Shown: one piece after another, positions 4,300 through 64,000 of the stretch
Numbering within the stretch: the stretch's first letter is position 1
Layout: each line of letters opens with the position of its first letter
Origin: Octopus sinensis
Taxonomy: Eukaryota
Reading direction: 5' to 3'
NCBI RefSeq assembly: GCF_006345805.1
Contig: NC_043007.1
Coordinates: 75,826,001 to 75,890,000 of the forward strand
DNA: 64,000 nt
Notes under the pieces: model-generated
The model's database searches: none
What the model saw: only the letters and a program-made list of their open reading frames with translations
Told to the model about the DNA's origin: nothing
Position numbers and translations under genes: made by a program

Positions 4300-5340
4300 T
4301 AAGCTTGAGAGGTGTTACTGTTGACAATGGTAAAAGGTGCTGGTGTTGTTGGTCTTAAGAGGTGTTTTGATGATGGTGTTAAGAAGTGTTGATGGTCTTA
4401 GGAGGTGTTGGTGTTGATGGTCTTAAGAGGAATTGGTGTTTATACTGTTAAGAGATGTTGGTATTGATGATATTAAAGATCTTGGTGTTGACTGTATTCA
4501 GAAGTGTTGTTATTGACTATGCCATGAGGTGTTGGTGTTGACTATATAGGAAAATGTTGGTATTGACTATGCTAAAATGTGTTGACGTTGACAGTGTTAA
4601 GAGGTGTTGACAGTGAAAAGCAGTGTTGACGGTGAAAAGAGGTGTTGACAGTTAAAAGAGGTGTTGACGGTGAAAAGAGGTGTTGACAGTGAAAAGAGGT
4701 GTTGACAGTGAAAAGAGGTGTTGACGCTGATAAGAGGTGTTGATAGTGATAAGAGATGTTGACAGTGAAAAGAGGTGTTGATGGTGAAAAGAGGTGTTGA
4801 CAGTGAAAAGAGGTGTTGACGGTGATAAGAGGTGTTGATAGTGATAAGAGGTGTTGACAGTGAAAAGAGGTATTGACAGTGAAAAGAGGTGTTGACAGTG
4901 AAAAGAGGTGTTGACAGTGATAAGAGGTATTGATAGTGATAAGAGGTGTTGACGGTGAAAAGAGGTGTTGACGGTGAAAAGAGGTATTGACGGTGAAAAG
5001 AGGTGTTGACGGTGATAAGAAGTGTTGATAGTGATAAGAGGTGTTGACGGTGAAAAGAGGTGTTGACGGTGAAAAGAGGTATTGACGGTGAAAAGAGGTG
5101 TTGACGGTGATAAGAGGTGTTGATAGTGATAAGAGGTGTTGACAGTGAAAAGAGGTGTTGACGGTGAAAAGAGGTGTTGACAGTGATAAGAAGTGTTGAT
5201 GATGATAGGAGGTGTTGTGTTGATGGTATTAATAGGTGTTGTGTTGATGATGGTAAGAGGTGTTGATTTTGACAGTACAATGTTGGTGTTGACTGTTAAG
5301 AGGTGTTGATGCTGATGGTGGTAAAAAGAACTGATGTTGA
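4300..5340. repeat. 19-bp minisatellite (aaaagaggtgttgacagtg) with degenerate flanks
   Basis: About 33 units in the core 4597-5220, with variants ataagaggtgttgatagtg and aaaagaggtgttgacggtg. Confidence 0.9.
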
Positions 5341-5891: not shown

Positions 5892-6011
5892 CTCATTTAT
5901 TGAACAGCAGCACAACAAGGATGAAGAGACAATTGACAAAACGAATTCCACAACCATAGCAAATGCTGCAAGACTAAACAAAATATAGAGTCTTGTTGGA
6001 TTATGATAACG
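5892..6011 (-). CDS. Gene 1 exon, TM4 (RYHNPTRLYILFSLAAFAMVVEFVLSIVSSSLLCCCSINE)
   Basis: tcttctttttcag acceptor and GAG|gttagt donor; 120 bp, phase 0-0. The xEFxLSIxSSxxCC pattern is typical of CD20/MS4A-like TM4. Confidence 0.85.
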
Positions 6012-7443: not shown

Positions 7444-7533
7444 AAGCCATAATGCATGGCTAGCAAAAGCACCAATTCCAGTGTGTGCAAAGACAGATGC
7501 TGACAAAATGGAAAGGATCATATAGGTAATTTT
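7444..7533 (-). CDS. Gene 1 exon, TM3 (KITYMILSILSASVFAHTGIGAFASHALWL)
   Basis: tttcgtttcag acceptor and CTT|gtaagt donor; 90 bp, phase 0-0, hydrophobic. Confidence 0.85.
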
Positions 7534-7984: not shown

Positions 7985-9328
7985 TGGATAGATAAAAAAT
8001 TCATGTTGTTTATGAATATGAGTCCCGTCGTGGAACCAATGCATCCCAGACAGTTCGAAACATCAATGAGGTGTTTAGTGAAGATGTGGCGAATAAGTGC
8101 ATTGTACATTGATGGTTTGAGAAGTTCCTGTTGGGTGACTTTACTCTTGAAAATCAGCCCTGTGGTAGACCTGAGACCAAGGTGGATAATGATAAGTTGC
8201 AAACTGTAGTACAAGTGGATAAATCTCACACTACATGTGAGTTAGTAGCAAGGTTTTATGTTTCAATTCCAACTGTATTGGACTATCTGAAACAAATCAG
8301 GGAGGTAAAGAAGCTGGACAAGTAGGTACCACACGAACTGAACAAGCATCAAATGACACATCATCTTAAAACTTGCTGCTCTTTGCTGTCACGACATAAA
8401 AGTGAACCATTTTTGCATTGTATTGTTATGCATGATAAAAAATGAATTCTTTTTAAAAATAGCAAGCGTTCTGCATGGTGGTTGGCTAGAGATGAAGTAC
8501 CAAAACACAATCAAAAAAAGAATATTTACCAAAAAAGCTAATTATTGTTTGGTGTCCAGCACTGGTGCCATCCACTACAGCTTCATGAGACCTGGTAAGT
8601 CAATTACAGTAGATGTATACATCAACCAACTGGAGGAAATGATGAGTGAATTCACAATTAAACTACTGAGATTGATCAACAGAGACAAGCCAATTCTCTT
8701 GCAAGATAATGCATGACCACATGCTGCTCAAAGAACGCTTCTCAAGTTACAGGAACTGAACTTGGAAGTACTCTGTCATCCACCATATTCACCTAACTTT
8801 GCGCCAACTGACAATCACATTTTCTAGGCATTAGACAACTTTTTGCAAGGAAAAAATTTCAAATCTGAAGAAGATGCAAAAACAGCCTTTTGAGGTTTCA
8901 TCACCTCTTCATCATCATCATTGTTTAATGTCCGCTTTCCATGCTAGCATGGGTTGGATGATTTGACTGCGGTCTGGCGAACCAGATGGCTGCACCACAG
9001 TCCAACCTAATCTGGCAGAGTTTCTACAGCTGGATGCCCTTCCTAATGCCAACCACTCCGAGAGTGTAGTGGGTGCTTTTATGTGCCACTGGCATGAGGG
9101 CCAGTCAAGTGGTACTGCCAACGGCCACGCTCAAATGGTGCTTTATATGTGCCACCTCTTGTTCTCCAGAATTCTTCACTGCTGGCATAAATAAGCTATT
9201 GATAAAATGGCAAAATTGTATTGATAATTTAGGTGTATACTTTGATTAACTACATTGCTTTCTGTTGAGATAAAGTAAAATAAACTTTTAGTTCGAAATT
9301 GGACATTTCATTCTTAATGACTTGATAT
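7985..9328 (+). mobile_element. Degenerate mariner (Hsmar1/cecropia-like) split by an RTE 3' fragment
   Basis: Remnants GRPETKVDND, *VPHEL, LLQDNA*PH, HPPYSPNFAPTD and PEFF..GINKL..KWQNCID..GVYFD*. Many stops. Interrupted at 8910-9158. Confidence 0.85.
8910..9158 (-). mobile_element. 5'-truncated RTE LINE 3' end with (GAT)n tail; further copies at about 10325-10560, 24735-25081, 29785-30130, 50525-50670, 56650-56880, 58115-58312, 59520-59770
   Basis: Same sequence as the 3' UTR contiguous with RTE ORF2 remnants at 61973-63395. Confidence 0.75.
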
Positions 9329-9764: not shown

Positions 9765-9836
9765 CAGTTTCATAGAGTGAATTGGTGAGATTGAATTTTT
9801 ACCAACAATCATTCCAAATATCCCAACTACCATAAC
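9765..9836 (-). CDS. Gene 1 exon, end of TM2 plus inner loop (VMVVGIFGMIVGKNSISPIHSMKL)
   Basis: gattttag acceptor and CTG|gtaaat donor; 72 bp, phase 0-0. Completes the helix begun by ..GCIASLW. Confidence 0.8.
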
Positions 9837-11627
9837 CTAAAATCATATAAATGTCATATAATAATATAAAACATATTAAAATCAAACAAATATGAAGTTT
9901 ATAAAAAAACGTATGTTTAGAAATAGAAACAAATACAAAAGAATATCTTTTAGTCTTATCTCCCATGTTCCCATAGCTTCAGCAAGAATATAACCACTTC
10001 TTTTGTTTACCTACACTTGTCGATAACTTGTGGTGTTAGCGGTGTTATGTGCTGTGATGAGCTATGTGGTGTTGGTGGAGAGGATTGTAGATGAGGTAAA
10101 AGGGAAGTGAAGACTGCAGGGGCTGGCAGAAGAGCCACAGGGGCATGCATGGACAGGAAGCATGTGTGGTCAGTTCGAGCAGAGACAGCAGCGAGAAAAG
10201 ACATGTTTATTGAGAGTGACCGCTCATTCCGCTGAGCCCAATAGGTAAGGCCCTTTGTATTTCTTTCTCCCATTTGCTTCTTTTTTCTGTTGTCTTTTTC
10301 CTCCATCACACTACATAACTCAAATCACATTCATCATATTAATGCCTGTTTTCCATGCTGGCATGGGTTGGACAATTTGACAGGATCTGATTAGCCAGAG
10401 GACTGTGCCAAGCTCCAATGTCTGCTTTGGTATGGTTTCTACAGCTAGATGCCCTTCTTAACAGCGAGCTCTTCACACATAATGTACTGGGTACATTTTA
10501 CATGACACTAGCACAGGTGAAGTAACCATGTAACTCACAAGACAAAACTCCTGACTGACGGAAGTGGGGGCATAACATGAATCGATAATATGCGTTATAT
10601 TTTATTAATGTTGATTTTCCTATTGTCCTCTTATTGATTTTGATTTGTATTGTTCTTTGAGTTAAAATAAAAAAAAAGGCTGGTAATCATATGTTTTAAA
10701 TCAGAGTTGACTTAGGATGCTAAATGCTCTATTTAAATTTGCATACTTTTAGTATATGGCAATATTTTTGCACATGAGAACAAACAGTCACATTCAGTCA
10801 GCTCATCAATATTTTCTAACATTTCCAGTTAAAATCATTATATTCAGGATACACAAATTTTTTCTGCATTACAGCTAATACAGCTATTACAGCTAATACA
10901 GAGAGTGAATTAAAATTTTTATCAATAGGAATGCTTCAATTGTATCAAAATTGGCATAGTTTTTTTTTAAGAGTTTGTTTCACAACCAAGTTGTGGATTC
11001 AGTCCCACTGTGTGACACCTTGGACAAATTTCTTCTAACAAAGCCCCAGGCCAACTAAAGCCTTGTTAGTATATTTGGTAAATGGAAACTGAAAGAAGCC
11101 CATTGTGTGTGTGTATTTTTGAGTTTGAAAAGAAATGTTTGTTGCCATTTCAGCATTGTCTATTCCATACAGAATGACGTTACTATTATTTTTCAACCTC
11201 AGGGTTCAGCTGGTTAACGATGTCGTTCCATACCAAATAGCCATGTTGAAGTGGCAACAAACATCACTTTTTAGCAGAGTTACTACTTACATCTCTAATA
11301 GAGATGCAAGAACTAGCTACTTTGCATGTTGTAAGATCAGCAGCTGAATGTCGCTTACTTTTTTTATATATTGCGAGCTGGGGCGAATGGCTGCCATTAG
11401 CAGACAGGTGTTCAGTACTGAGGAGGAGCAAATACTCTGAAACCAGGCTGGTCTACTGGTCCTGTCAAATCATTAGATGGTTGGGGTTTACTGCCCTGCT
11501 ATAGTGGACACAGGTTGTGTCATTTACCAACTGGAGGTGTTCTCCTGGGGTTAAAAAATAGTAATAACGTTGCTCCATATGGAACAGTCATGTTAAAGTG
11601 GCCAGAAACATTACCTGTTTATATTTC

Positions 11628-13653: not shown

Positions 13654-13860
13654 CCACAGGCTTGCAATACATCCAAATACGGCAGATATGTAGGGCAGCT
13701 CTTCAGTGTTGACTCCATAGTAGGGTGAATAGAGTAGTTGTCTGCCAAACCAACGCTTTGTATTGAAGGCAACCAGTGAAGAAGCAAAACAAAAACCCCC
13801 AAGGACCAAATGCATTATACCTGTTAATGTTAACCCTGAGTATGTGTGACGAACAAGCAT
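13654..13860 (-). CDS. Gene 1 first coding exon of a CD20/MS4A-like 4-TM protein (MLVRHTYSGLTLTGIMHLVLGGFCFASSLVAFNTKRWFGRQLLYSPYYGVNTEELPYISAVFGCIASLW)
   Basis: Acceptor tttttttttgattttag at 13885, in-frame TAA upstream of aagATG, TGG|gtaagt donor. TM1-loop-TM2 ending in W at a phase-0 intron, as in MS4A-type genes. Confidence 0.85.
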
Positions 13861-46549: not shown

Positions 46550-47956
46550 ATGGCGACTTGCGCGGGGGTCACGGGAAAAAGAAATAATGATTCGTCGATA
46601 ATCATGAAGGATGTTTTCTTTGAGAAGAGTAAACTCAAGGAATATGAAGGGCTCTTCAAAGGGGAGGGTGATAGCGTGAAGCTGATCCCCCCCGCGAAGG
46701 CAAAAGAGGACAAGGAAAACAAGACAGTGACATATGGAACCCAAGACAAAGATACGAAGAAGCTGGCAAGAGTGGAGATGGCCGAAATCGAAAGGTGTCT
46801 GGGAGACATAATGGGGAAATCAACCTACGTGAGTGGAGGCAAGAAGTTTGGTACGGTGGAGGTGAGATGTGCAACGGAAGAAATTGCAGCCTCACTGGCT
46901 ACCACTGTACTAGGAGCCGAGGAATTTATAATGTGGCCCTCATACAAGGGAAGAGGAGGGGTCCGGGTTAAAATCCCGAATATGCCCCCAGAAGTGAAAA
47001 CAGAGTGGCTGGCAGCAGCTATTCTAGGAGCGGCAGAAGAGGAGGTGGAGGTGGAATCCTTTAAGGAGTCCAACGCGGTAAACTGGAGAGGATATGGGGT
47101 GGAACTGTGTTTGATGGCCACAGGGGAGGACATTGAAAGGTTCCCCTACAGAATTGAAATTGAGGATGAAGGGGCCCTCAGTGTAATTGTAGAGGGAGGA
47201 AAACCAAACTGTTGCTTGTGCGGGACGGGGGGGCACATTAAGGAGGAGTGCCTGTTATACGAATTCGTAGCGGAGTGCGAGCGGGAACTTGAAGAAAGGA
47301 AGAATACGGTAAATGAAAGGGAAAGCATGGAAAGGGAAACAAAACAGCAAGAGAGGGGAAATAGTGGGTCAGTGAAGGAAGGAGAAATAAAGGAAGGGAG
47401 AGAAGTGGAACCAAAGCAGAGTCAGGAAGAGAAAAAGGAAAGGGAAACAACAGGAAAGAAACAAGAGAGAGATCAGAATCAAACGAAGGGAAGGGACGGC
47501 ACACAAAAGGAGGAAGAAGGGGAACATAAAACACGAGAGAGGGAGAGAACAGACAAGGAACCAAAGGGACAAGAGAAGGAGGAGGAAGGAGAGGAGGGCA
47601 AAAGGAGAGAAGGAGAGAAGCAGAGAGAGGAGAACAAGGAAGAAATGGGCCCGAAGGGAAAAGCGAGGGAGAGCGTAGGACGGAAGCAAGATTACTGCTT
47701 CTACAAGTTGGTAACCTTCCATTTCTGCCCTGAAATGAAAGACTTGACATGTAATACGGAGGGACATATATGGGTCGACGGGATGACCGATCAGTGGCGG
47801 GAGACTGCTCTAATCCCTGAAGAAAGAGTCGCTGAGTTCCTCAGAGCTGCCGGAGAGAGTGTAATATTTTACACGAGTGTTCGAGTGAGAGAGCGGCTGC
47901 CTGAGGGCTCAGTGATTGACTTTAGAGAATTGAAAGCTATTATGGAATACGTATAG
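46550..47956 (+). CDS. Intact 468-aa Tx1/L1-type ORF1-like (gag-like) protein with CCHC zinc knuckle and charged tail; no ORF2 follows
   Basis: CCLCGTGGHIKEEC (CX2CX4HX4C) preceded by an RRM-like region (VRVKIPNMPPEV). Downstream 600 bp has no APE or RT motif. Confidence 0.8.
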   Translation: MATCAGVTGKRNNDSSIIMKDVFFEKSKLKEYEGLFKGEGDSVKLIPPAKAKEDKENKTVTYGTQDKDTKKLARVEMAEIERCLGDIMGKSTYVSGGKKFGTVEVRCATEEIAASLATTVLGAEEFIMWPSYKGRGGVRVKIPNMPPEVKTEWLAAAILGAAEEEVEVESFKESNAVNWRGYGVELCLMATGEDIERFPYRIEIEDEGALSVIVEGGKPNCCLCGTGGHIKEECLLYEFVAECERELEERKNTVNERESMERETKQQERGNSGSVKEGEIKEGREVEPKQSQEEKKERETTGKKQERDQNQTKGRDGTQKEEEGEHKTRERERTDKEPKGQEKEEEGEEGKRREGEKQREENKEEMGPKGKARESVGRKQDYCFYKLVTFHFCPEMKDLTCNTEGHIWVDGMTDQWRETALIPEERVAEFLRAAGESVIFYTSVRVRERLPEGSVIDFRELKAIMEYV

Positions 47957-49001
47957 AATTGTGAGAAGAGAGAGAAGAAAGAAGAGAAAAAAAAAAAAGA
48001 AAATTTTGTGAAATATATGTGACGAAAATGTAACCTCTTGATTCCGGGGATCGAGTGGGCATTTACATCTCATTGTAAATATTCTTTCATATGTCATTTT
48101 TTACTTTTATTTTTTCCTTTTCTTGTCATTCGCTTTCTTATTTTAAGTTCCCCGATTGTACTGTCCCATCTATGTTCGCCCCTTGTGGGTAGTAATAAAA
48201 TCACATGGAGGAAAGCACCTTCGAAAAGTGTCTTGGTGCGACTATGAAAGGTATCTAATCAGAGGCAGTAAATTTGCCACAATAGAAGCAAGGTTCGAGT
48301 TAACGGAGCGTGCAAGGGAGTACTCGACTCGAACTTGAAAAGTGGAAATATTTTATTTTTACCTTTATATCTGGGACGTAGGATAAAAATTAAAAATGCC
48401 CTTCCCCCCAGAAGTAGAGGTAGGCTGGATTGTAGTCACACTTCTATACAAGAGGGAGGACAAGATACAATTGATCGAAATTACAAGAGACGGGCTAACA
48501 ATTCCAGTCTGTTATATATTTTGAGTATTGTTATCACTAGCACTATCAAGATATAACTTTGTATTTTGTATTTTATGTGTAGATGTATATATATAGATGT
48601 ACATGTAATATGTACACATATATATATACACATATATACATGCACTAGCACTATGACCCGGCAACGATGGGTCTTTAATGCTAGTATATATACATAATTT
48701 TAAATTGAATTCATTTCAATTAACTTAAAATTTTAATTGTGATTCGAATTTAATTGTAGCCATGAAACGTACATAGTTTTTTTACTTATTATATATTAAT
48801 TATTTATTTTTATACTTTTTGAGATCTAGTTATATGTTTTATAAAAATATATTTTATTTGTTATTTATGTTTTGGTTTATGTCTATCACTGTTTGAGTTG
48901 CATAATAGTGGTTTTATTTTTAATTTATATTTTATATTACATATATATATATATATATAATGCTTTTTAAACAATTTTTAATTGCACAAAGTATGAAAAT
49001 T

Positions 49002-49859
49002 CTATTCCCTTTCATTGGGTAGTTGATGAAGGCATAGTTCTTTTGTAGCATCTGCATCTGGAGGAGAAGCATTGTATTGTGGAGGTATTTCTGTTCCAGC
49101 AGTATATGATGGAGAAGCAGTGTCTTGTGGAGGCATATGTTCTTCAGTGGCATCTGGAAGAGAAGCATTGTATTGTGGAGGCATTTCTGCTCCAGCAGTA
49201 TATGATGGAGAAGCAGTGTCTTGTGGAGGCATATGTTCTTCAGTGGCATCTGGAAGAGAAGCATTGTATTGTGGAGGCATTTCTGCTCCAGCAGTATATG
49301 ATGGAGAAGCAGTGTATTGTGGAGGCATATGTTCTTCAGTGACATCTGGAAGAGAAGCATTGTATTGTGGAGGCATTTCTGCTCCAGCAGTATATGATGG
49401 AGAAGCAGTGTATTGTGGAGGCATATGTTCTTCAGTGGCATCTGGAAGAGAAGCATTGTATTGTGGAGGCATTTCTGCTCCAGCAGTATATGATGGAGAA
49501 GCAGTGTATTGTGGAGGCATATGTTCTTCAGTGACATCTGAAAGAGAAGCATTGTATTGTGGAGGCATTTCTGCTCCAGCAGTATATAATGGAGAAGCAG
49601 TGTATTGTGGAGGCATATGTTCTTCAGTGACATCTGAAAGAGAAGCATTGTATTGTGGAGGCATTTCTGCTCCCACAACATATGAAGGATAAGCAGTGTA
49701 TTCTGGAGGCTTATGTTCTTCAGTGGCGTCTGGAAGAGAAGTAGTGTATTGTGGAGGCATTTCTGAAGGATAAGCAGTGTATTCTGGAGGTCTAAGTGCT
49801 TCATTTCTATCAGTTGGCAGATGTATAATCCCTGGTCCTTGTGTTGTGACAGCATTTTT
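49002..49859 (-). CDS. Gene 2 terminal exon, 285 aa, with a 96-bp (32-aa) tandem repeat carrying 14 PPxY motifs
   Basis: tttctgcttctacag acceptor, phase 0 (KNAVTTQGPG..), TAG at 49004-49002, AATAAA at 48918-48913. Confidence 0.85.
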   Translation of the reverse strand, partial: KNAVTTQGPGIIHLPTDRNEALRPPEYTAYPSEMPPQYTTSLPDATEEHKPPEYTAYPSYVVGAEMPPQYNASLSDVTEEHMPPQYTASPLYTAGAEMPPQYNASLSDVTEEHMPPQYTASPSYTAGAEMPPQYNASLPDATEEHMPPQYTASPSYTAGAEMPPQYNASLPDVTEEHMPPQYTASPSYTAGAEMPPQYNASLPDATEEHMPPQDTASPSYTAGAEMPPQYNASLPDATEEHMPPQDTASPSYTAGTEIPPQYNASPPDADATKELCLHQLPNERE

Positions 49860-50353
49860 CTGTAGAAGCAGAAAGATAATTTTAGAAAGGTTATATTAAC
49901 ATGTAAAATGTCTTTTAAATCATATTTATTTCCTTAGCCATTTAAGAGCTAATATATGTCATGTTTTCCTGTTTACCTTAAAACATTACCATTTCTCAAT
50001 GAGTTTGTTCCAAAATTTTCATACCCCACCAAAATCATCAAAATCATCATAATACTTGAAGCAAAAAAATTCCTAGTCCTTCTGTTCCACCCCAGAGTTC
50101 TGTTTGGTCCATTCTCAGAATGGACTAAACAGCACAGGAGATATGTGTGATGGAGAGTTGCTGAAGAGATCACAGGATGTGTGATGAAAGGTTTCCAGAC
50201 AGTAAACATAAAATAAGAACAATAATAAACAAGTGTGGAATGAATTTGGTGAAAAAAGAAGAAATATGACCATCCCGAAATACAAGAATATCTGTTTCAA
50301 CACATGACTTCACGTCAGGAACCTTGCAAAACAAATACACAAACGTAAAAATA

Positions 50354-50405
<52 letters not shown>

Positions 50406-51269
50406 AAATTGAAAAAGGAAAATACGCACACTTACATAGTTTTAATATAATTTTTAATATATCGACCGGTTTCGCTATCGCTATTCATGATATTATGTTT
50501 TACTTATTTGAATATATTATATTCATCATCGTTTATCGTCCATTGTCCATGTAGGCATGGGTTGGATGGTTTGACAAGAGCTGGCAAGCTGGGGTGCTGC
50601 ACTATATTCCAGTCTGATTTGCATGGTTTCTACGACTGGATGCCTTCCTAATGCCAACCATTTTATACATGTGCTAGGCTCTTACCACTAAGCAAAAAGT
50701 AAACAAACACAGAAAAACTTCACGAAATATATGAAAAATACCTAAAATTAAATTCTAATTGATATGAGCACAGGTAATAGACAATTTATAAAGTTTGCAC
50801 AAAAATAAAAACATGTACAGAGAAACTGCATGCAGACGAGAAGACTCAGCACAGCAAGTGATATGTTGCTATGGTAACTAGTTGTTAATGCCTTGCTGTC
50901 TGTTGATTAGCTAAAATTACACAAATTTTCAACTGTAGTTCCAAGTAACATTAAATTCTTTAATTTACAAGATAAAGTAATTGATTGAGTGTAATCAAAA
51001 TTCTCAAATCCATCCATTGCCCAAATCTGAGCAAAATTAAAGGGGGCTGATTTTGTGACTCAAACTAGATCCAAAAATGTTTAAAAGTTGATATTTTTTA
51101 TTTTGTTCACTTTGAATTTAATTGTTTTTAAATGCTTCCATCCATTGCTTTATACAAGAAAAAAGAAATTGGAAAATCTGGACCAAACAGAGAAATTCTA
51201 ACTTAACAAAAAATATACAAAGAGAAAGAAATGGTTGTTTCCAAAAGCCAAAAAAACCCCTTTGCATCA

Positions 51270-52100
51270 CAAATTTCATCAACCATGATACTGAAATAGT
51301 CAGCCTTCATGGCTTCATTAATGATTTGCCTCCTGATGACTGTTGCAAGACATTCAATTGATTGATTCTGGATAACAGGAGATAAATATGTGGCATTCTT
51401 TGGTACATTTTCCAGAAAGGCTGCAAATGCAGGATTATCTTTTGCTTTTCACTTAATAAAAATGTTGAAATTACTGTCTCCTTCCTTCTTCTCATGGAAC
51501 CAGCTTCCTCTTTTTGCAAGGGAAGTGATTACATGAAGAATTCATGAAAGAGTTAATCTGTTCTTTTCGGCTCGCTGAGCATATGCCTTAGAAAAATGTT
51601 CTGTGATTGATTTCTTTTCTCCTTGGCATATCATCAAAAATTCATCAACCCTTTTCATTACTCTTTAATGGGTATCTGACTTTTCATGATGAGTTAGAGA
51701 CCCTCTTTCTTGACCACAGGCATTCTTCCAATCCTGGAATGGTTTGGTAACAAATTCCGGATTGCTCATATCTTGGGCAGCAAAGTAAACACACAATGAA
51801 CAAAAAACTGAATCCAGTGACTTAGAATACCTAAGCCATGGGAACTTTTCTTCCCATGCTGGAGAATACCTTCTGTTCTGGTGATTCTTTGGGTATGTAA
51901 ACTGCTTTGGTGTCTTCCACTTCTGCTGAAGAATGGTCTTGTGCTCATTTTCGCCCATGGATGCTCGACTAACTAGCCCAATATCAAGTTCAAGAGAATT
52001 TTGCATTACTTGCTCCTGAATTTCAAAGACCCCACTTTTTGAATGGCTTTTATTTGTAGTACTGAGATGCTAGATGTCAGAGATTCATTGTTGGCATTAC
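51270..52100 (-). pseudogene. hAT-superfamily transposase N-terminal fragment (TTF-type zinc finger, ZMYM1/DUF4371-like)
   Basis: WEEKFPWLRYSKSLDSVFCSLC..FQDWKNA..HHEKSDTH, then ATYLSPVIQNQ and YFSIMVDE. Contains stops. Confidence 0.8.
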
Positions 52101-56467: not shown

Positions 56468-56560
56468 CTCTATTCCTGAACAGCGATAACAAAAATATAA
56501 AGAAGCAATTGCAAAAGTTAAATTCAGAAACAGTGAAAAAATTCCAACATAATGTATTGG
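56468..56560 (-). CDS. Gene 2 exon, TM4 (PIHYVGIFSLFLNLTFAIASLYFCYRCSGIE)
   Basis: tttcttttcttttgcag acceptor and GAG|gtaagt donor; 93 bp, phase 0-0. Flanks are collinear with those of 5892-6011. Confidence 0.85.
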
Positions 56561-58277
56561 CTGCAAAAGAAAAGAAACATTTGAAAGAGAAAGAAAGTGA
56601 TAGAAATAACATTGCCAAAAAGAAGTATTATTCATACTTTTCGAGTAGTCATCATCGTCATCATCATCATTTAGCATCCGCTTTCCATGCTAGCATGGGT
56701 TGGACGGTTCAACTGGGGTCTGGGAAACCAGATGGCTGCACCAGGCCCAGTCTGATCTGGCAATGTTTCTACGGCTGGATGCCCTTCTTATGCCAACCAC
56801 TCTGTGAGTGTAGTGGGTGCTTTTTACGTGCCAGATGGGGCTGGCAAATGGCCACGGTCGGATGGTGCTTTTTAAAGCTGATGTTTTACTTTTAAAGATT
56901 TCTGTGTAGTGTTAAAATAGCTTTAATGCAGTCTTTTACTGTTTTACTAGTTTCAGTAATTTGAATGTGGCATTGCTGGGGTACCACCTTCTAAGATATA
57001 GCCGATTATATTAACCTAAATTAATTTTACTGATTCTAATTTCATCAGCCTCAGATGGATGAAAAATAAAGTTGCTGACCGAAGGAAGGATTTGAACTCA
57101 GAACCTAAAAGAATATAACCAATTTACCACAACCTGTTCTGTAAGACATTTTACCATTTCTACACCCAGCAACTTGTACATTAATTTATATGAATATCAC
57201 TGTATTTTTCAGGAAATAAAATTTCTATAGAAATTACTATAGAGAAGTTAATAAAATGCATACACATAATTCTAACTGTAGGATTTCTATTAGAGAAACT
57301 ATTGAAAAAATGAAGAAATAATATCCAATTATTAATGATTCAATTATTGTTCTGCAGCATCAAATGATTATCTATTCTGACTATTTCAGCCAAACAATAA
57401 CACCATAATTCCAAATATCTAAATTTAATTTTTAAAGTATCCACATTGTCTTTTATGTTAGTTAATGTTAATGCTAATTGGTGTTTGATGAATTTTGTAA
57501 TTTAGTTTTTATTTTGTAAAACAGAATTTTGAATTATTTAGTGTCTGTCCAACAACAGATACTATGAATAAATGGTTTGTTTCTTCACTCCCAGCCTGAG
57601 CACAAGTACAAAGCACCTGATGATAATCACGAAGGAAACCATCCCTCAAAATTTAACTGAATTAAAGAAGATACAAAAAGTTTTTACGAAAACCAAAAAT
57701 TAGTTTAACAATCTATAAATGTTTTCCATCAATAAAAGTCAATAATTTAAAATAATTTCATACAATCACAACTTTGATTAATAATTTCTGATCTAGATAT
57801 TTTTAATCTGTACATTAATTGTTCATCACAGTTATAAATTTATTATCATGTTTATTATAGTTGTGAGTACTGTAAGTTCCAAAGGAATTGATTTCAGAAC
57901 TTGTTTCCAATTTCTTGGAGAAATCCTTCCACATGTTTGTAATGCTCTTCAAGAAAGGGCATGATTCCCAGTCTCTACCACCATCCTTGCAAAAGTAGTA
58001 TTTCATGTCAACATAGATATTCTGGACTACCTCATTTTCTCTTTGTTCTCAAAAACCAAAAATTGTAGGTTTGTCTCAAAGACCACATAGAACTACTGTT
58101 TTAACTATGTAACCTGTGCCGGTGGCACGTAAAAAGCATCCGCTACACTCATGGAGTGGTTGGCATTAGGAAGGGCATCCAGCTGTAGAAACACTGCCAG
58201 ATCAGTCTGGGTCTGGCGCAGCCTTCTGACTTCCCAGACCCCAATTGAACCGTCCAACCCATGCTAGCATGGAAAAC

Positions 58278-58545: not shown

Positions 58546-58626
58546 TTCCTTACAAATAAATAGAAGGGTTACAAAACATGCAGCCATAATTCCTAACAAA
58601 ATATTGGAAACAAGATAGATTTTTCT
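58546..58626 (-). CDS. Gene 2 exon, TM3 (RKIYLVSNILLGIMAACFVTLLFICKE)
   Basis: Poly-T plus cag acceptor and GAA|gtaagt donor; 81 bp, phase 0-0. Parallels KITYMILSIL of gene 1. Confidence 0.85.
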
Positions 58627-61974: not shown

Positions 61975-63395
61975 TCATCGTTTAACGTCCGTTTTCCTTG
62001 CTAGCATAGGTTGGACGGTTCGACTGGGGTCTGGGAAGCCAGAAGGCTGCACCAGGCTCCAGTGGGACCTGGCAGTGTTTCTACAGCTGGATGCCCTTCC
62101 TAACACCAACCACTCCGTGAGTGTAGTGGGGGCTTTTTATGTGCCACTGGCACAGGTGCCAGGCAAGGCTGGAAATGGCCATGATCGGTTGGTGCTTTTT
62201 ATGTGCCACCGGCACGGAAGCCAGTCAAGGCGGCACTGGCATCGGCCACGTTCGGATGGTGCTTTTTACGTGCCACCGGCACAGGGATCACAACTACAAT
62301 CTCCATTGATTTTTTATGTTGATGTAACTTGACTCAGTAGGTCTCCTCAAGCACAGGGTCGAAATGGTGTTTCTTTATTTGCCACCTGCACAGGAGTCAG
62401 TCCAGTGGAACTGGCAACGACTGGGTGCCAGTCATCGAATTTGGTTCAATTTCGAATTCACTTGCCCCAACAGGTCTTCGTAAGTAGAGTTTAGTGTCCA
62501 ATGAAGGGAGGTTGGCATGGGTGACAGTCGTCGGATGTGGTTTGATTTCGAATTCAATATTGATTTCACTTGCCTCAACAGGTCTTCACAAGCAGAGTTT
62601 TGTGTCCAAAGAAGGAAAAGTATGTATAAGTGGGCTAGCTACATCCCTGGCAAAGGCCACGGGTTATGGACTCACTTGTCCTGCTGGGTCTTCTCACACA
62701 GCATATTTCCAAAGGTCTCAGTCACTAGTCATTGCCTCGATGAGGCCTAATGTTCGAAGGTCATGCTTCACCACCTCGTCCCAGGTTTTCCTGGGTCTAC
62801 CTCTTTTACAGCTTCCCTCCAATCGCTAGGGAGTGGCACTTTTTCACACACCTATCTTCATCTATTCTCGCCACATGACCATACCAGCGCAATCGTCTCT
62901 CTTGCGCACCACAACTGATGCTTCTTAGGTCCAGCTTTTCTCTTAAGGTACTTACACTCTGTTGAGTATGCACACTGACATTACACATCCATCGGATCAT
63001 ACTGGTGTCATTGAAGCTTACGCATGTCCTCAGCAGTCACGGGTCATGTTTCACTGCCATGTAGCATGGCTGTTCATACACATGCGTCATACAGTGTGCC
63101 TTTTACTCTGAGCGAGAGGCCTTTTGTCACCAGCAGAGGTAAGAGCTCTCTGAACTTTGCCCAGGCTATTCTTATTCTAGCAGTTACACTTTCAGCACAC
63201 CCGCCCCCGCTACTGACTTGGTCATCTAGGTAACAGAAGCTATCAACTACTTCTAGTTTTTCTCCCTGGAAAGTGACAGAAGTTGTTCTCTGCAGATTTT
63301 CAGTGTTTATTGCTCCTGAGCATCTGCCACATACAAAAACTATCTTCCTAGTTAGCCTTCCTTTGACATTGCTGCACCTCTTATGTGTCCATAGC
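61973..63395 (-). mobile_element. RTE-clade LINE, 3' part of ORF2 plus long 3' UTR
   Basis: EVVDSFCYL..RIRIAWAKFRELLPLL..MLHGSE, MIRWMCNV..RRLRWYGHVAR; ends in a (GAT)n tail. Confidence 0.88.
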
Positions 63396-63626
63396 TTACT
63401 GGGTACATCTTATATATAAACGCCATGATAGATCGTTAGCACCTACATGCATTTTTTTCTCTCCTTGTTTTTTTTCTGTGTATCTTTCTGTCAAAGAGCG
63501 TAGGCGCAAAACGTAAAAGACTTGTTCTATTTCTATTCCTGAGCACCATACTAATACATTTGTTTGTTTGTACTCCACCTGCCTTCGTCTTTTGTTTATT
63601 TTCGTAAACCTTCCCGTTATATATAT

Positions 63627-63670
<44 letters not shown>

Positions 63671-64000
63671 GGCAGTTTGTCTGTCTCTGCGTCTGTGTGT
63701 CTGTCAGGTTGTACCTTCACCCTGACCACGGCTTTCAACCGATTCTGATGTAACTTGACACACACATAGCCCAATGTCATAATTCAAAACTAACGCAGCG
63801 AAAATTTTGAAAAGTTTCCCCAGTTCTGAAAAAAATTGATAAATTCTACATGGGGTCGAGAATCTAAGCTTTTTATATGCAACACATTTTCTGTTGTAGT
63901 TTTCGCAACTTGCAATCGATTTTCACCAAACTCATAGTGAAGCTTAATGTTACCCTAAGAAACTTAATTCTGACGTTAGTTTTCCATGCAATACCTTACC

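What the first reader, a model, noticed from the sequence alone, without database searches (positions are those of the whole stretch)
49002..49859. Cytoplasmic tail built from a higher-order repeat with 14 PPxY motifs
Seen: alternating 16-aa halves MPPQYNASLPDATEEH and MPPQYTASPSYTAGAE (96-bp unit), giving 14 PPxY plus 2 PPQD variants and extra xPSY motifs. Established: PPxY binds class I WW domains (NEDD4-family ligases, YAP). Inference: with 4-TM topology the tail is cytosolic and would be an unusually multivalent, copy-number-tunable WW/ubiquitin-ligase scaffold. Gene 1 shows no such tail.
Basis: partly seen in the sequence, partly recalled or inferred. Interest (0 to 1): 0.7.

Follow-up and report, generated by a model that had tools for sequence, protein, structure and literature searches.

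The report
Octopus membrane protein tail: 14 PPxY motifs
The last coding exon of an octopus-specific CD20-like membrane protein gene is a tandem repeat that places 14 PPxY docking motifs, the kind ubiquitin ligases bind, in one probably cytosolic tail; this is an extreme, copy-number-variable form of a known adaptor design, and whether the gene is expressed is still unproven.

Summary
Window 49859..49002 (minus strand) is an open exon holding a 96-bp x 7.4 tandem array with 96% matches and no indels. It encodes 14 PPxY (12 PPQY, 2 PPEY), 2 PPQD and 6 xPSY, with PPxY every 16 residues.

The window is Octopus sinensis chromosome CM016869.1. The exon is the terminal exon of a divergent member of a mollusc-wide 4-TM family that belongs to the CD20/MS4A-like superfamily.

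- **Frame and splice.** Paralog tails align to this frame from the exon's first codon. Canonical phase-0 splice sites support the 56468>49859 junction.
- **Motif conservation.** PPxY occurs in 20 of 49 family tails against 3.3 expected, often at the extreme C-terminus. N-glycosylation sequons are at chance level.
- **Origin of the unit.** The 32-aa repeat unit is an amplified copy of the ancestral two-PPxY tail module.
- **Copy number.** O. vulgaris has 5.4 units (10 PPxY).

Caveats:
- The TM1 and TM2 exons lie outside the window.
- The two public annotations disagree; O. sinensis calls only a 252-aa tail-only ORF.
- I have no transcript or protein evidence.
- Selection tests have little power.

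The closest known system is ENTREP/FAM189A2, a CD20-homology protein with a PPxY tail that activates ITCH, followed by NDFIP.

The parts
49002..49859 (-). Terminal coding exon (exon 5) of 'gene 2': 285 codons plus a TAG stop. It has a 33-aa unique lead (KNAVTTQGPGIIHLPTDRNEALRPPEYTAYPSE), the PPxY array, and a unique end (ELCLHQLPNERE).
   Evidence: Translation. The acceptor tacag|AAAAAT is visible. The O. vulgaris ortholog P0001 is 95% identical to the query, which included this exon. The paralogs P0002, P0003 and P0006 align from the first codon.
49054..49765 (-). Tandem array of a 96-bp (32-codon) unit x 7.4. The unit is built from two diverged 48-bp halves, MPPQYNASLPDATEEH and MPPQYTASPSYTAGAE.
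   Evidence: TRF gives 96% matches and 0% indels. The O. vulgaris array has 5.4 units.
49002..49760 (-). ATG-initiated 252-aa ORF inside the exon. This is the only gene product on record at this place in the O. sinensis assembly.
   Evidence: ORF list. An exact look-up returns GCA_006345805.1 CM016869.1:75875002-75875760, with no other called gene within +-10 kb.
56468..56560 (-). Exon 4, encoding TM4: PIHYVGIFSLFLNLTFAIASLYFCYRCSGIE. Acceptor ttttgcag|CCAATA, donor GAG|gtaagt, phase 0 at both ends.
   Evidence: Sequence. Identical in O. vulgaris. Homologous to the TM4 exons of gene 1 and P0002. Kyte-Doolittle hydropathy peak of 1.88.
58546..58626 (-). Exon 3, encoding TM3: RKIYLVSNILLGIMAACFVTLLFICKE. 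Acceptor t(n)cag|AGAAAA, donor GAA|gtaagt, phase 0 at both ends.
   Evidence: Sequence. Identical in O. vulgaris. It occupies the same position as the 90-bp TM3 exons of gene 1 (7533..7444) and P0002. Hydropathy peak of 2.38.
45671..45718 (-). Relic half-unit of the repeat (YTAGAEMLP*YNASPP), about 92% identical to array units and carrying an in-frame stop. It lies 3.3 kb downstream of the gene.
   Evidence: tblastn and blastn.

Best explanation
The region is the last coding exon of a young, fast-evolving paralog ('gene 2') in a tandem cluster of octopus genes. These genes encode small four-helix membrane proteins of the CD20/MS4A-like superfamily.

**Reconstructed gene.** It has five exons with phase-0 introns throughout:
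- exon 1: TM1 plus the first half of TM2
- exon 2: the rest of TM2
- exon 3: TM3
- exon 4: TM4
- exon 5: the tail

Exons 1 and 2 lie beyond the right edge of the window. Exons 3-5 are at 58626..58546, 56560..56468 and 49859..49002.

**Origin of the array.** The ancestral tail of this subfamily carries one module with two PPxY motifs (HMPPQYTxYPxYxxGAxMPPQYxAxxxxVxExx). In gene 2 this 32-aa module was amplified by unequal crossing-over into a 96-bp coding minisatellite. The result is 14 PPxY at 16-residue spacing in a disordered, strongly acidic tail.

**Inferred topology.** As in CD20 and Fc-epsilon-RI beta, both termini face the cytosol.

**Inferred mechanism.** The tail is a highly multivalent ligand for class I WW domains, meaning NEDD4-family HECT ligases and possibly Yorkie/YAP, Kibra or MAGI. 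It would recruit, cluster and probably activate these ligases at a membrane, as NDFIP and ENTREP do with 2-3 motifs. The outcome would be ubiquitination and endosomal sorting of itself or of neighbouring cargo. Valency changes with repeat number.

**Shown:** the repeat, the frame by homology, splice-site compatibility, the family relationship, family-wide PPxY enrichment and the interspecies copy-number difference.

**Inferred:** expression, the full 4-TM product, cytosolic orientation, WW binding and ligase activation.
For: **Repeat and motifs.**

**Species and locus.** The window is collinear with O. vulgaris OX597824.1 at 98-99% identity. Exact look-ups place it on O. sinensis CM016869.1.

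**Gene structure**
- Canonical phase-0 junctions for exons 3-5.
- Exons 1 and 2 are intact with canonical sites in O. vulgaris.
- P0002 and gene 1 have the same five-exon layout.

**Frame.** P0002, P0003, P0004 and P0006 align to KNAVTTQGPG and to the MPPQY module in this frame.

**Family**
- A profile of the octopus cores finds 50 representatives, including scallop, mussel, unionid and Nematostella proteins.
- Two of these, P0024 and P0052, pass Pfam's CD20 (PF04103) threshold at 38.2 and 28.2 bits against a cutoff of 27.9.
- The AlphaFold model of the P0002 core has pLDDT 75 and pTM 0.70. Its best PDB matches are Fc-epsilon-RI beta (MS4A2), sarcospan and CD20, with TM-scores of 0.57-0.67.

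**Topology**
- Four hydropathy peaks of 1.62-2.63.
- K+R count of 9 on the N-terminus, loop 2 and proximal C-tail, against 3 on loops 1 and 3.

**Motif function**
- PPxY is present in 20 of 49 family tails against 3.3 expected; none of 200,000 simulations reached 20. In 10 tails it lies within the last 18 residues.
- N-glycosylation sequons are at chance level, 34 observed against 32.4 expected.
- A relative, P0018, has its core and PPAY tail in one uninterrupted ORF on ~1-kb run assemblies, consistent with a spliced mRNA.

**Precedent**
- ENTREP/FAM189A2 has a CD20-homology region and two cytoplasmic PPxY motifs that bind ITCH WW domains and activate ITCH (PMC8811627).
- Clustered PY substrates are better recognised by NEDD4 (Mund and Pelham, as cited in PMC8509885).

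**Copy number.** 7.4 units with 14 PPxY in the window, against 5.4 units with 10 PPxY in O. vulgaris. The two species split about 2.5 Mya (PMC10700109).
Against: - **No transcript or peptide evidence.**
- **The two public annotations disagree with each other and with my model.** O. sinensis has only a 252-aa tail-only CDS. The O. vulgaris model P0001 has an unrelated N-terminus and only TM3(part)-TM4-tail.
- **Gene 2's core is the most divergent in the family.** It is 38% identical to P0002, has a 6-residue gap in TM3, has CYRC in place of the near-invariant CCCC, and its TM1 is only marginally hydrophobic with a peak of 1.62.
- **No signal of purifying selection.** dN/dS between paralog cores is about 0.7-0.9. 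In the tail module dN (0.25) exceeds dS (0.09). From inspecting the unit table, all the variants I could see among central repeat units are non-synonymous. One of them, Y to D, destroys the motif in two units.
- **Low power between species.** There are only 2 substitutions in about 430 bp of unique exon, so this comparison cannot show constraint.
- **Structural evidence is weak and indirect.** Foldseek E-values are 0.011-0.08, and the model is of a paralog, not of gene 2.
- **Exons 1 and 2 could not be checked in O. sinensis**.
Confidence: 0.45

Rival explanations
1. Gene 2 is a neutrally drifting or decaying young duplicate. The array is a minisatellite that happens to sit in a former coding exon. 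Its many PPxY are a by-product of amplifying a module that was functional in the parent gene, and they have no selected function of their own.
For: - dN/dS near 1 in the core, and dN greater than dS in the tail module.
- The variants I could see among central units are non-synonymous, and the Y-to-D change kills two motifs.
- Gene 2 has lost the conserved CCCC, has a shortened TM3 and has the most divergent core in the family.
- Neither annotation recovers a full 4-TM product.
- A scrambled relic of the repeat lies 3.3 kb downstream.
- Minisatellites are common here; for example, a 19-bp array lies at 4587-5217.
Against: - All five exons keep open frames and canonical phase-0 splice sites.
- Exons 3 and 4 are identical in two species.
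- Gene 2 retains the 19 residues that are invariant in alignment A1.
- The array period is exactly 32 codons with no indels in either species.
- dN/dS is equally high between gene 1 and P0002, both of which are conserved and annotated. A high ratio is therefore a family trait, not a sign of decay.
- The two PPQD units are shared by both species, while the copy-number change lies elsewhere in the array.
Confidence: 0.3
2. The product is the tail alone: a soluble, acidic 252-aa PPxY-repeat protein translated from the ATG at 49760, as in the O. sinensis gene call. It would act as a cytosolic decoy or scaffold for WW-domain proteins without any membrane anchor.
For: - This exact 252-aa ORF is the only product on record at the locus in GCA_006345805.1.
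- An in-frame stop lies just upstream of the acceptor. The open segment begins at 49895, so an unspliced transcript would give exactly this ORF.
Against: - The 33 codons before the ATG are conserved with paralog tails from the first codon of the exon: KNAVTTQGPG against ENAVETQGP, EIAVTTQGPG and KNAVTTQRQE.
- The acceptor is strong and in phase with an intact TM4 exon.
- All relatives carry the tail on a 4-TM core, including the cDNA-like contigs.
- The basis of the gene call (ab initio or transcript-supported) is unknown.
Confidence: 0.12
3. The tail is extracellular or lumenal. It would be a Pro/Ser/Thr-rich stalk N-glycosylated at its 7 NAS sequons, and the PPxY motifs would be irrelevant to WW domains.
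For: - There are 7 NxS sequons at regular spacing, and the composition is P/A/T/S-rich.
- NxS/T sequons also occur in the tails of several relatives.
Against: - Sequons in family tails are at chance level, 34 against 32.4 expected, while PPxY is about six-fold enriched.
- An even number of TM helices, no signal peptide, a positively charged N-terminus and a positively charged TM2-TM3 loop all indicate N-in/C-in.
- The closest folds, CD20 and Fc-epsilon-RI beta, have cytosolic termini (established knowledge).
- The cysteine cluster at the end of TM4 in the family looks like a cytosolic palmitoylation site (inference).
Confidence: 0.04

Closest known systems
ENTREP/FAM189A2 (and FAM189A1/B): CD20-homology membrane proteins with cytoplasmic PPxY motifs that bind and activate ITCH (PMC8811627)
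   Same: - A CD20-like membrane region is followed by a long disordered cytoplasmic C-terminal tail.
- The PPxY motifs in that tail are the functional elements.
- The proposed action is the same: recruit and activate a NEDD4-family ligase at a membrane and drive endocytic sorting.
   Different: - ENTREP has 2 PPxY motifs in a 343-aa non-repetitive tail and also binds epsin. Here there are 14 motifs in a 32-aa tandem array.
- Orthology to FAM189 was not tested.
- The octopus proteins do not themselves reach Pfam CD20. The link runs through a profile and a fold comparison.
- The published ENTREP isoform was predicted to be single-pass.
NDFIP1/NDFIP2 (yeast Bsd2): PY-motif membrane adaptors and activators of NEDD4-family ligases
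   Same: - Small polytopic membrane proteins whose cytosolic PPxY motifs engage several WW domains and relieve ligase autoinhibition.
- Multivalency is the operative principle (own knowledge; also the discussion in PMC8811627).
   Different: - NDFIP proteins have three TM helices, and their 2-3 PY motifs are in the N-terminal region.
- They are an unrelated family and non-repetitive.
MS4A/CD20 family proper (CD20, Fc-epsilon-RI beta/MS4A2) and sarcospan
   Same: - Best structural matches to the paralog core model.
- Four TM helices, both termini cytosolic, roughly one exon per helix, and genes in tandem clusters.
- The C-terminal tail carries a signalling motif; in MS4A2 this is an ITAM (own knowledge).
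   Different: - Sequence similarity is below Pfam detection for the octopus members.
- To my knowledge, vertebrate MS4A tails are not PPxY arrays.
Paralog tails in the same octopus family: P0004 (O. bimaculoides) with three copies of the 16-aa unit PPQ[YH]IAQPPNVTGAYL, and P0006 (O. sinensis) with about 7 VYPPN pentapeptide repeats
   Same: - Same gene family and same tail exon.
- Independent tandem amplification of short Pro/Tyr modules.
   Different: - Far fewer PPxY: 2 in P0004 and 0 in P0006.
- Different unit lengths.
Other 4-TM or polytopic proteins with PY motifs in cytosolic tails: LAPTM4/5, connexin 43, occludin (own knowledge; Cx43-ITCH in PMC11006747)
   Same: A PY motif in a cytosolic tail targets the protein or its partners to NEDD4-family ligases and lysosomal sorting.
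   Different: They have 1-3 motifs, belong to unrelated folds and have no repeat array.

Membership tests
CD20-like / MS4A superfamily (Pfam PF04103) | Four transmembrane helices in a compact core of about 150 aa | tested here: met
   The reconstructed gene 2 has four Kyte-Doolittle peaks of 1.62, 2.63, 2.38 and 1.88. Only TM3 and TM4 are in the window; TM1 and TM2 come from the O. vulgaris locus. The AlphaFold model of the paralog core has four long helices.
CD20-like / MS4A superfamily (Pfam PF04103) | Significant match to the Pfam CD20 profile | tested here: inconclusive
   P0001, P0002, P0014 and P0018 have no CD20 hit, even at E<=1 to 10. The octopus-core profile does retrieve P0024 (E 1.9e-12) and P0052 (E 5.8e-4). 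These pass the CD20 threshold at 38.2 and 28.2 bits against a cutoff of 27.9. Membership is therefore transitive, not direct.
CD20-like / MS4A superfamily (Pfam PF04103) | Fold similarity to solved MS4A structures | tested here: inconclusive
   Top PDB matches of the P0002-core model:
- 8k7t_B and 8y81_B (Fc-epsilon-RI beta): TM-score 0.59-0.67, E 0.011-0.08
- 9c3c_n (a chain of the dystrophin-glycoprotein complex entry; I take it to be sarcospan, which the output does not state): TM-score 0.59
- 8vgn_G (CD20): TM-score 0.57-0.59, E 0.66
The ranking is consistent but the statistics are weak, and the model is of a paralog (pLDDT 75), not of gene 2.
CD20-like / MS4A superfamily (Pfam PF04103) | N- and C-termini cytosolic | not testable with these tools
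   Only the positive-inside tally is available: 9 K/R on the predicted cytosolic segments against 3 on the predicted outer loops. The rest is analogy.
PPxY-type WW-domain ligands / NEDD4-family adaptors (NDFIP and ENTREP type) | Canonical [L/P]PxY motif(s) | tested here: met
   14 PPxY in 285 residues, against 0.68 expected from composition.
PPxY-type WW-domain ligands / NEDD4-family adaptors (NDFIP and ENTREP type) | Motif conserved among homologs beyond what composition predicts | tested here: met
   20 of 49 family tails carry PPxY against 3.3 expected. In 10 tails it lies within the last 18 residues. The representatives are less than 50% identical to each other but are still related, so the test is not fully independent.
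PPxY-type WW-domain ligands / NEDD4-family adaptors (NDFIP and ENTREP type) | Motifs lie in a cytosolic, accessible (disordered) region | not testable with these tools
   Inferred from topology, from the composition of the tail (P 17.5%, 40 D+E against 6 K+R), and from pLDDT below 50 at residues 162-171 of the paralog model, the start of the tail.
PPxY-type WW-domain ligands / NEDD4-family adaptors (NDFIP and ENTREP type) | Physical binding to WW domains and activation of, or ubiquitination by, a HECT ligase | not testable with these tools
   This needs a pull-down, ITC or two-hybrid experiment and an in vitro ubiquitination assay.
MARVEL domain proteins (UniRef label on paralog P0003) | Match to the Pfam MARVEL profile (PF01284) | tested here: not met
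   No MARVEL hit for the octopus proteins. The only hit is 17 bits against a cutoff of 32.8, in the distant Nematostella relative P0047, where CD20 scores higher.
Protein-coding exon (as opposed to a non-coding minisatellite) | Period divisible by three, no frame-breaking indels, frame shared with homologs, splice sites in phase | tested here: met
   The period is 96 bp with 0% indels in both species. Homologous tails share the frame. The junctions are phase 0. By contrast, the array at 4587-5217 has a 19-bp period. Transcription itself was not tested.

The most novel reading that the evidence does not exclude
The O. vulgaris/O. sinensis lineage has evolved, within a CD20-like family whose tails ancestrally carry one or two PPxY, a membrane-anchored 'super-adaptor'. 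Its 10-14 evenly spaced PPxY motifs could bind many WW domains at once and nucleate clusters or condensates of NEDD4-family ligases on a membrane. The dose would be set by a repeat number that changes on a timescale of 2.5 million years or less. It would be a natural case of evolutionary tuning of ubiquitin-ligase recruitment through motif valency.
Probability: 0.25. Interest if true: 0.65.

Novelty: new variant of a known kind. Interest (0 to 1): 0.45.

Why it matters
Membrane adaptors that use PPxY motifs to recruit and activate NEDD4-family ligases normally carry one to three motifs. This holds for NDFIP, ENTREP, LAPTM and the arrestin-related adaptors.

A natural protein with 14 motifs at fixed 16-residue spacing, differing by four motifs between sister species, would be a ready-made series for studying valency. 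It could show how valency and spacing control WW-domain engagement, ligase activation and possibly clustering.

The work also defines an unnamed mollusc-wide branch of the CD20/MS4A-like superfamily with a conserved C-terminal PPxY. That links the family as a whole to ubiquitin-dependent sorting and parallels vertebrate ENTREP.

If the gene proves to be unexpressed, the case is still useful. It would show a short linear motif module amplified by minisatellite dynamics in a dying duplicate.

Tried and rejected
- **Pfam on P0001, P0002, P0014 and P0018:** no informative hit.
- **Third word-index protein search, using exons 1-4 plus the unique tail lead:** it returned nothing, not even P0001, which shares about 110 identical residues with the query. 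The negative result is uninformative. It cannot be read as absence of transcripts or orthologs.
- **Structure prediction of the reconstructed gene 2:** I used the paralog core instead.
- **Confirming exons 1 and 2 in O. sinensis through the scaffold that carries the P0002 ortholog (L010):** no match to gene 2's exons, and no blastn hit of 500 bp or more to the first 21 kb of the O. vulgaris locus L001, which holds those exons.
- **Selection tests.** Paralog dN/dS is about 0.7-0.9 everywhere, including between two well-conserved genes. The interspecies comparison has 2 substitutions in about 430 bp. Neither has the power to decide function.
- **MARVEL label from UniRef:** not supported by Pfam.
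- **Extracellular glycosylated stalk:** rejected on sequon statistics and topology.
- **Cephalopod rhodopsin's PPQGY-repeat C-tail and synaptophysin's Tyr/Gly/Gln-repeat tail as analogues (recalled from memory).** The paper search found only a reference to Matsushima et al. 1990. Those repeats are not PPxY, so I did not pursue them.
- **ORF length as evidence of coding:** rejected, because a second frame on the same strand and a long ORF on the plus strand are also open across the array.
Full report
**1. What is in the sequence**

On the minus strand, 49859..49002 translates without a stop into 285 residues followed by TAG. Tandem Repeats Finder gives a 96-bp unit x 7.4 at 49054-49765, with 96% matches and no indels. 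The unit is two diverged 48-bp halves encoding MPPQYNASL[S/P]D[A/V]TEEH and MPPQYTASP[S/L]YTAGAE.

A script counts the following:
- 14 PPxY (12 PPQY, 2 PPEY)
- 2 PPQD
- 6 xPSY
- 7 NAS sequons
- PPxY spaced at exactly 16 residues through most of the array

Shuffling the tail's composition gives 0.68 PPxY on average.

Openness of the frame is not evidence of coding. A second frame on the same strand is open through the array, and a long ORF spans it on the plus strand.

**2. Where the window comes from**

The window is collinear with Octopus vulgaris OX597824.1 (31.48-31.53 Mb, locus L001) at 98-99% identity.

Exact protein look-ups place it on Octopus sinensis GCA_006345805.1, chromosome CM016869.1, with record coordinate = window coordinate + 75,826,000.

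The window's gene 1 exons carry the O. sinensis variants of LOC115217098 (GRQLLY, HALWL) and not the O. vulgaris ones. The two species diverged about 2.5 Mya (PMC10700109).

**3. The gene**

- **Acceptor.** The exon starts at a strong acceptor, ttctgcttctacag|AAAAAT.
- **Exon 4, 56560..56468.** It encodes PIHYVGIFSLFLNLTFAIASLYFCYRCSGIE and ends GAG|gtaagt in phase 0. The junction reads ...CYRCSGIE|KNAVTTQGPG...
- **Exon 3, 58626..58546.** It encodes RKIYLVSNILLGIMAACFVTLLFICKE, again with canonical phase-0 sites.
- **Exons 1 and 2.** No TM1 or TM2 exon exists between 58626 and 64000. In the O. vulgaris locus they lie upstream of the point that corresponds to window position 64000:
  - Exon 1 is at L001 3957-4124: MIVGFMYTRMRKTGIFHLCSGG...FIILLS|gtaagt. 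Its 5' leader is homologous to gene 1's.
  - Exon 2 is at L001 15288-15359: IIAIGIVGIITGETANPERTTIML|gtaaat.

The reconstructed product has 138 core residues plus the tail, and four hydropathy peaks of 1.62, 2.63, 2.38 and 1.88. The neighbouring paralogs have the same five-exon, all-phase-0 layout. These are P0002 in O. vulgaris and gene 1 in the window (13860..13654, 9836..9765, 7533..7444, 6011..5892).

**4. The frame is fixed by homology**

The tail of the adjacent paralog P0002 reads ...CCCSGIG|ENAVETQGPEV...HMPPQYTVYPPYVAGAQMPPQYTAYVPNVDENAM... The O. bimaculoides protein P0003 reads ...SGIEEIAVTTQGPGV...HMPPQYSAYPPYAVGAQMAPLYNASVPNVAEGAM... Both align to gene 2's tail from the first codon of the exon and across one full 32-aa unit.

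The repeat unit is therefore the whole ancestral two-motif tail module, amplified.

Other paralogs have amplified different pieces of the same exon:
- P0004: PPQ[Y/H]IAQPPNVTGAYL x 3
- P0006: VYPPN x about 7

This tail exon is a hot spot for coding-repeat expansion.

**5. The family**

The first search found only P0001 and P0002. The second, with P0002, found nine Octopus proteins, P0002 among them, all uncharacterised. No Pfam family matched them.

A profile of seven octopus cores searched against 1.84 billion representatives gave 50 hits. Named hits include proteins from Pecten/Ylistrum, Mytilus, Sinanodonta and Nematostella. The rest come from run assemblies.

P0024 and P0052 pass Pfam's CD20-like (PF04103) threshold, and P0047 and P0038 come close.

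An AlphaFold model of the P0002 core (pLDDT 75, pTM 0.70) has these best PDB matches:
- Fc-epsilon-RI beta (MS4A2)
- 9c3c chain n of the dystrophin-glycoprotein complex, which I take to be sarcospan
- CD20

TM-scores are 0.57-0.67 and E-values are weak, from 0.011 upward.

I therefore file the family as a divergent branch of the CD20/MS4A-like superfamily. That placement rests on transitive and structural evidence, not on a direct profile match. The UniRef label 'MARVEL' on P0003 is not supported.

**6. PPxY is a family feature**

Among 49 representatives with a tail of at least 20 residues after the TM4 cysteine cluster, 20 contain PPxY. Shuffling each tail predicts 3.3, and none of 200,000 simulations reached 20.

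In ten tails the motif lies within the last 18 residues. Examples are ...TTPPAYIPQA...QPPAYKQQA...NPPPYKQ...ANPPEYQP and ...KNPPPYCP.

N-glycosylation sequons in the same tails are at chance level, 34 against 32.4.

One relative, P0018, has its 4-TM core and PPAY tail in an uninterrupted ORF on ~1-kb assemblies from four sequencing runs. In a family with multi-kb introns, that indicates a spliced mRNA.

This is the strongest argument that the motif, not just the composition, matters, and that it works on the cytosolic side.

**7. Topology**

- The N-terminus is MIVGFMYTRMRKT, with 3 K/R and no acidic residue.
- The TM2-TM3 loop has 3 K/R.
- The two predicted outer loops together have 3 K/R, against 9 on the predicted cytosolic segments.

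With four helices and no signal peptide this gives N-in/C-in, as in CD20 and MS4A2 (established knowledge). The family's cysteine cluster at the cytosolic end of TM4 (CCCC; CYRC in gene 2) looks like a palmitoylation site (inference).

The tail is strongly acidic, with 40 D+E against 6 K+R. The start of the tail has low confidence in the paralog model.

**8. Copy number**

The O. vulgaris assembly has 5.4 units. Its protein P0001 has 10 PPxY and 2 PPQD, against 14 and 2 in the window.

- The two PPQD units at the 3' end are shared, so they predate the species split.
- The difference lies in the central units.
- O. sinensis keeps an older-looking half-unit, KPPEYTAYPSYVVGAE, which O. vulgaris lacks.
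- Both arrays are in frame.

A collapse during assembly cannot be excluded without reads.

**9. What weakens the functional reading**

- **Annotation.** The O. sinensis record has only the 252-aa ATG ORF 49760..49002 at this place, and no other called gene within 10 kb. The O. vulgaris model P0001 joins an unrelated N-terminus to part of exon 3, then exon 4 and the tail. Neither annotation recovers a 4-TM protein.
- **Divergence.** Gene 2's core is the most divergent member of the family.
- **Selection.** Paralog dN/dS is 0.7-0.9 in every pair, including gene 1 against P0002. In the tail module dN is 0.25 against dS of 0.09.
- **Repeat variants.** From inspecting the unit table, the variants among central units that I could see are non-synonymous.
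- **Between species.** Exons 3 and 4 are identical, and the unique tail parts differ at 2 sites. That is too few to test.
- **No transcript evidence was obtainable.** The one search that might have found transcript-derived fragments failed even to recover P0001.

**10. Mechanism proposed**

If the gene is expressed as reconstructed, it yields a small CD20-like membrane protein. Its cytosolic tail presents up to 14 class I WW ligands separated by 12-residue linkers.

NEDD4-family ligases carry 2-4 WW domains and are autoinhibited. PY-motif adaptors relieve this: NDFIP by own knowledge, and ENTREP/FAM189A2 as shown in PMC8811627. Clustered PY substrates are recognised better (Mund and Pelham, as cited in PMC8509885).

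The array would therefore recruit and activate several ligase molecules per tail. It would drive ubiquitination and endosomal sorting of itself or its neighbours, or it would sequester WW proteins such as Yorkie. Tyrosine phosphorylation of PPxY could switch binding off (established for WW ligands; not tested here).

**11. Comparison and novelty**

The design of a CD20-like membrane region with a PPxY tail that activates a HECT ligase is known from ENTREP, and the principle is known from NDFIP.

New here:
- The valency of 14, where 1-3 is usual. I could not find a survey to quantify this, so the comparison rests on my own knowledge.
- The origin of the array by tandem amplification of the ancestral two-motif module.
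- The interspecies change in copy number.
- The recognition of a mollusc-wide CD20-like subfamily with a conserved C-terminal PPxY.

I rate it a new variant of a known kind. Interest is 0.45 and confidence in the full mechanistic statement is 0.45.

Noticed in passing
window 13860..13654, 9836..9765, 7533..7444, 6011..5892 (minus strand): Gene 1 is O. sinensis LOC115217098 (XP_029642555.1, 214 aa), a 4-TM paralog. Its tail (GTSVWVSTNQTAEF...YPPNVVPAYEPVQEKHGFEMKCP) has no PPxY. Its tail exon ends about 1 kb to the left of window position 1, so it is not in the window.
   Followed up: yes
window 49859..49002 against L004 52380-52598 (P0002 tail exon, O. vulgaris): The tail module of gene 2 is much closer at synonymous sites to P0002's tail (dS about 0.09) than the TM exons are (dS 0.35-0.8). 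The 15-nt ATGCCTCCACAATAC is identical in all copies. This suggests gene conversion or exon exchange between the head-to-head neighbours, or constraint at the nucleotide level. There are few synonymous sites (about 22).
   Followed up: partly
window 45718..45671 and 45636..45601: A 48-bp relic of one repeat half-unit carries an in-frame stop. Next to it, in scrambled order, is a 36-bp copy of intron sequence from just upstream of the tail exon. Microsatellites flank the pair. It looks like the remnant of a rearranged partial duplicate.
   Followed up: partly
window 43692..43585 (minus strand): A 57% identical match to residues 21-57 of the odd N-terminus of the O. vulgaris model P0001 lies downstream of gene 2. 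That N-terminus may derive from a dispersed repeat and not from a genuine exon.
   Followed up: no
window 46419-48202: About 1.8 kb is present in O. sinensis but absent from the collinear O. vulgaris locus. It coincides with a stretch of unusual composition in 46001-48000 (GC 0.43, GC skew +0.35, AT skew +0.31).
   Followed up: no
window 4587-5217: A large non-coding minisatellite (19-bp unit x 33, with a higher-order 95-bp unit) lies in gene 1's last intron. Several frames are open across it purely because of the repeat. It is a useful contrast to the 96-bp coding array.
   Followed up: partly
window 52069..51668, 63409..62721, and repeated about 150-250-bp elements (e.g. 62136..61978, 56911..56693, 50681..50529, 10497..10342, 9130..8921): Transposon debris sits in the introns. 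There is a hAT/TTF-zinc-finger-like ORF (YSPAWEEKFPWLRYS...CSLC), a LINE/RTE-like reverse-transcriptase fragment, and many copies of a SINE-like element (translating as ...HPAVETLP...PVEPSN...). The identifications are from motifs I recognise and were not searched.
   Followed up: no
O. vulgaris OX597824.1 about 31.4815 Mb against 31.4869 Mb (L004 / L001): P0002 and gene 2 are arranged head to head with start codons about 5.3 kb apart. Gene 1 follows gene 2 on the same strand. In O. sinensis the P0002 ortholog (LOC115230846) sits on an unplaced 49.5-kb scaffold. Its 10-kb upstream flank gave no blastn hit of 500 bp or more to the first 21 kb of L001, which points to an assembly gap or a rearrangement next to this window.
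   Followed up: partly
proteins P0024, P0027, P0028, P0030, P0031, P0033, P0036, P0039, P0042: A bivalve subgroup of the family ends in a different conserved C-terminal motif, Y-x-(K/R)-(L/M)-(K/R)-(K/R/Q)-(W/L)-(A/V/T)-(L/M)-P, in place of or in addition to PPxY. This may be a second short linear motif of unknown partner.
   Followed up: no
tool behaviour: The word-index protein search returned no hit for a query sharing about 110 identical residues with P0001, which an earlier search had found. Negative results from that tool should not be read as absence.
   Followed up: yes
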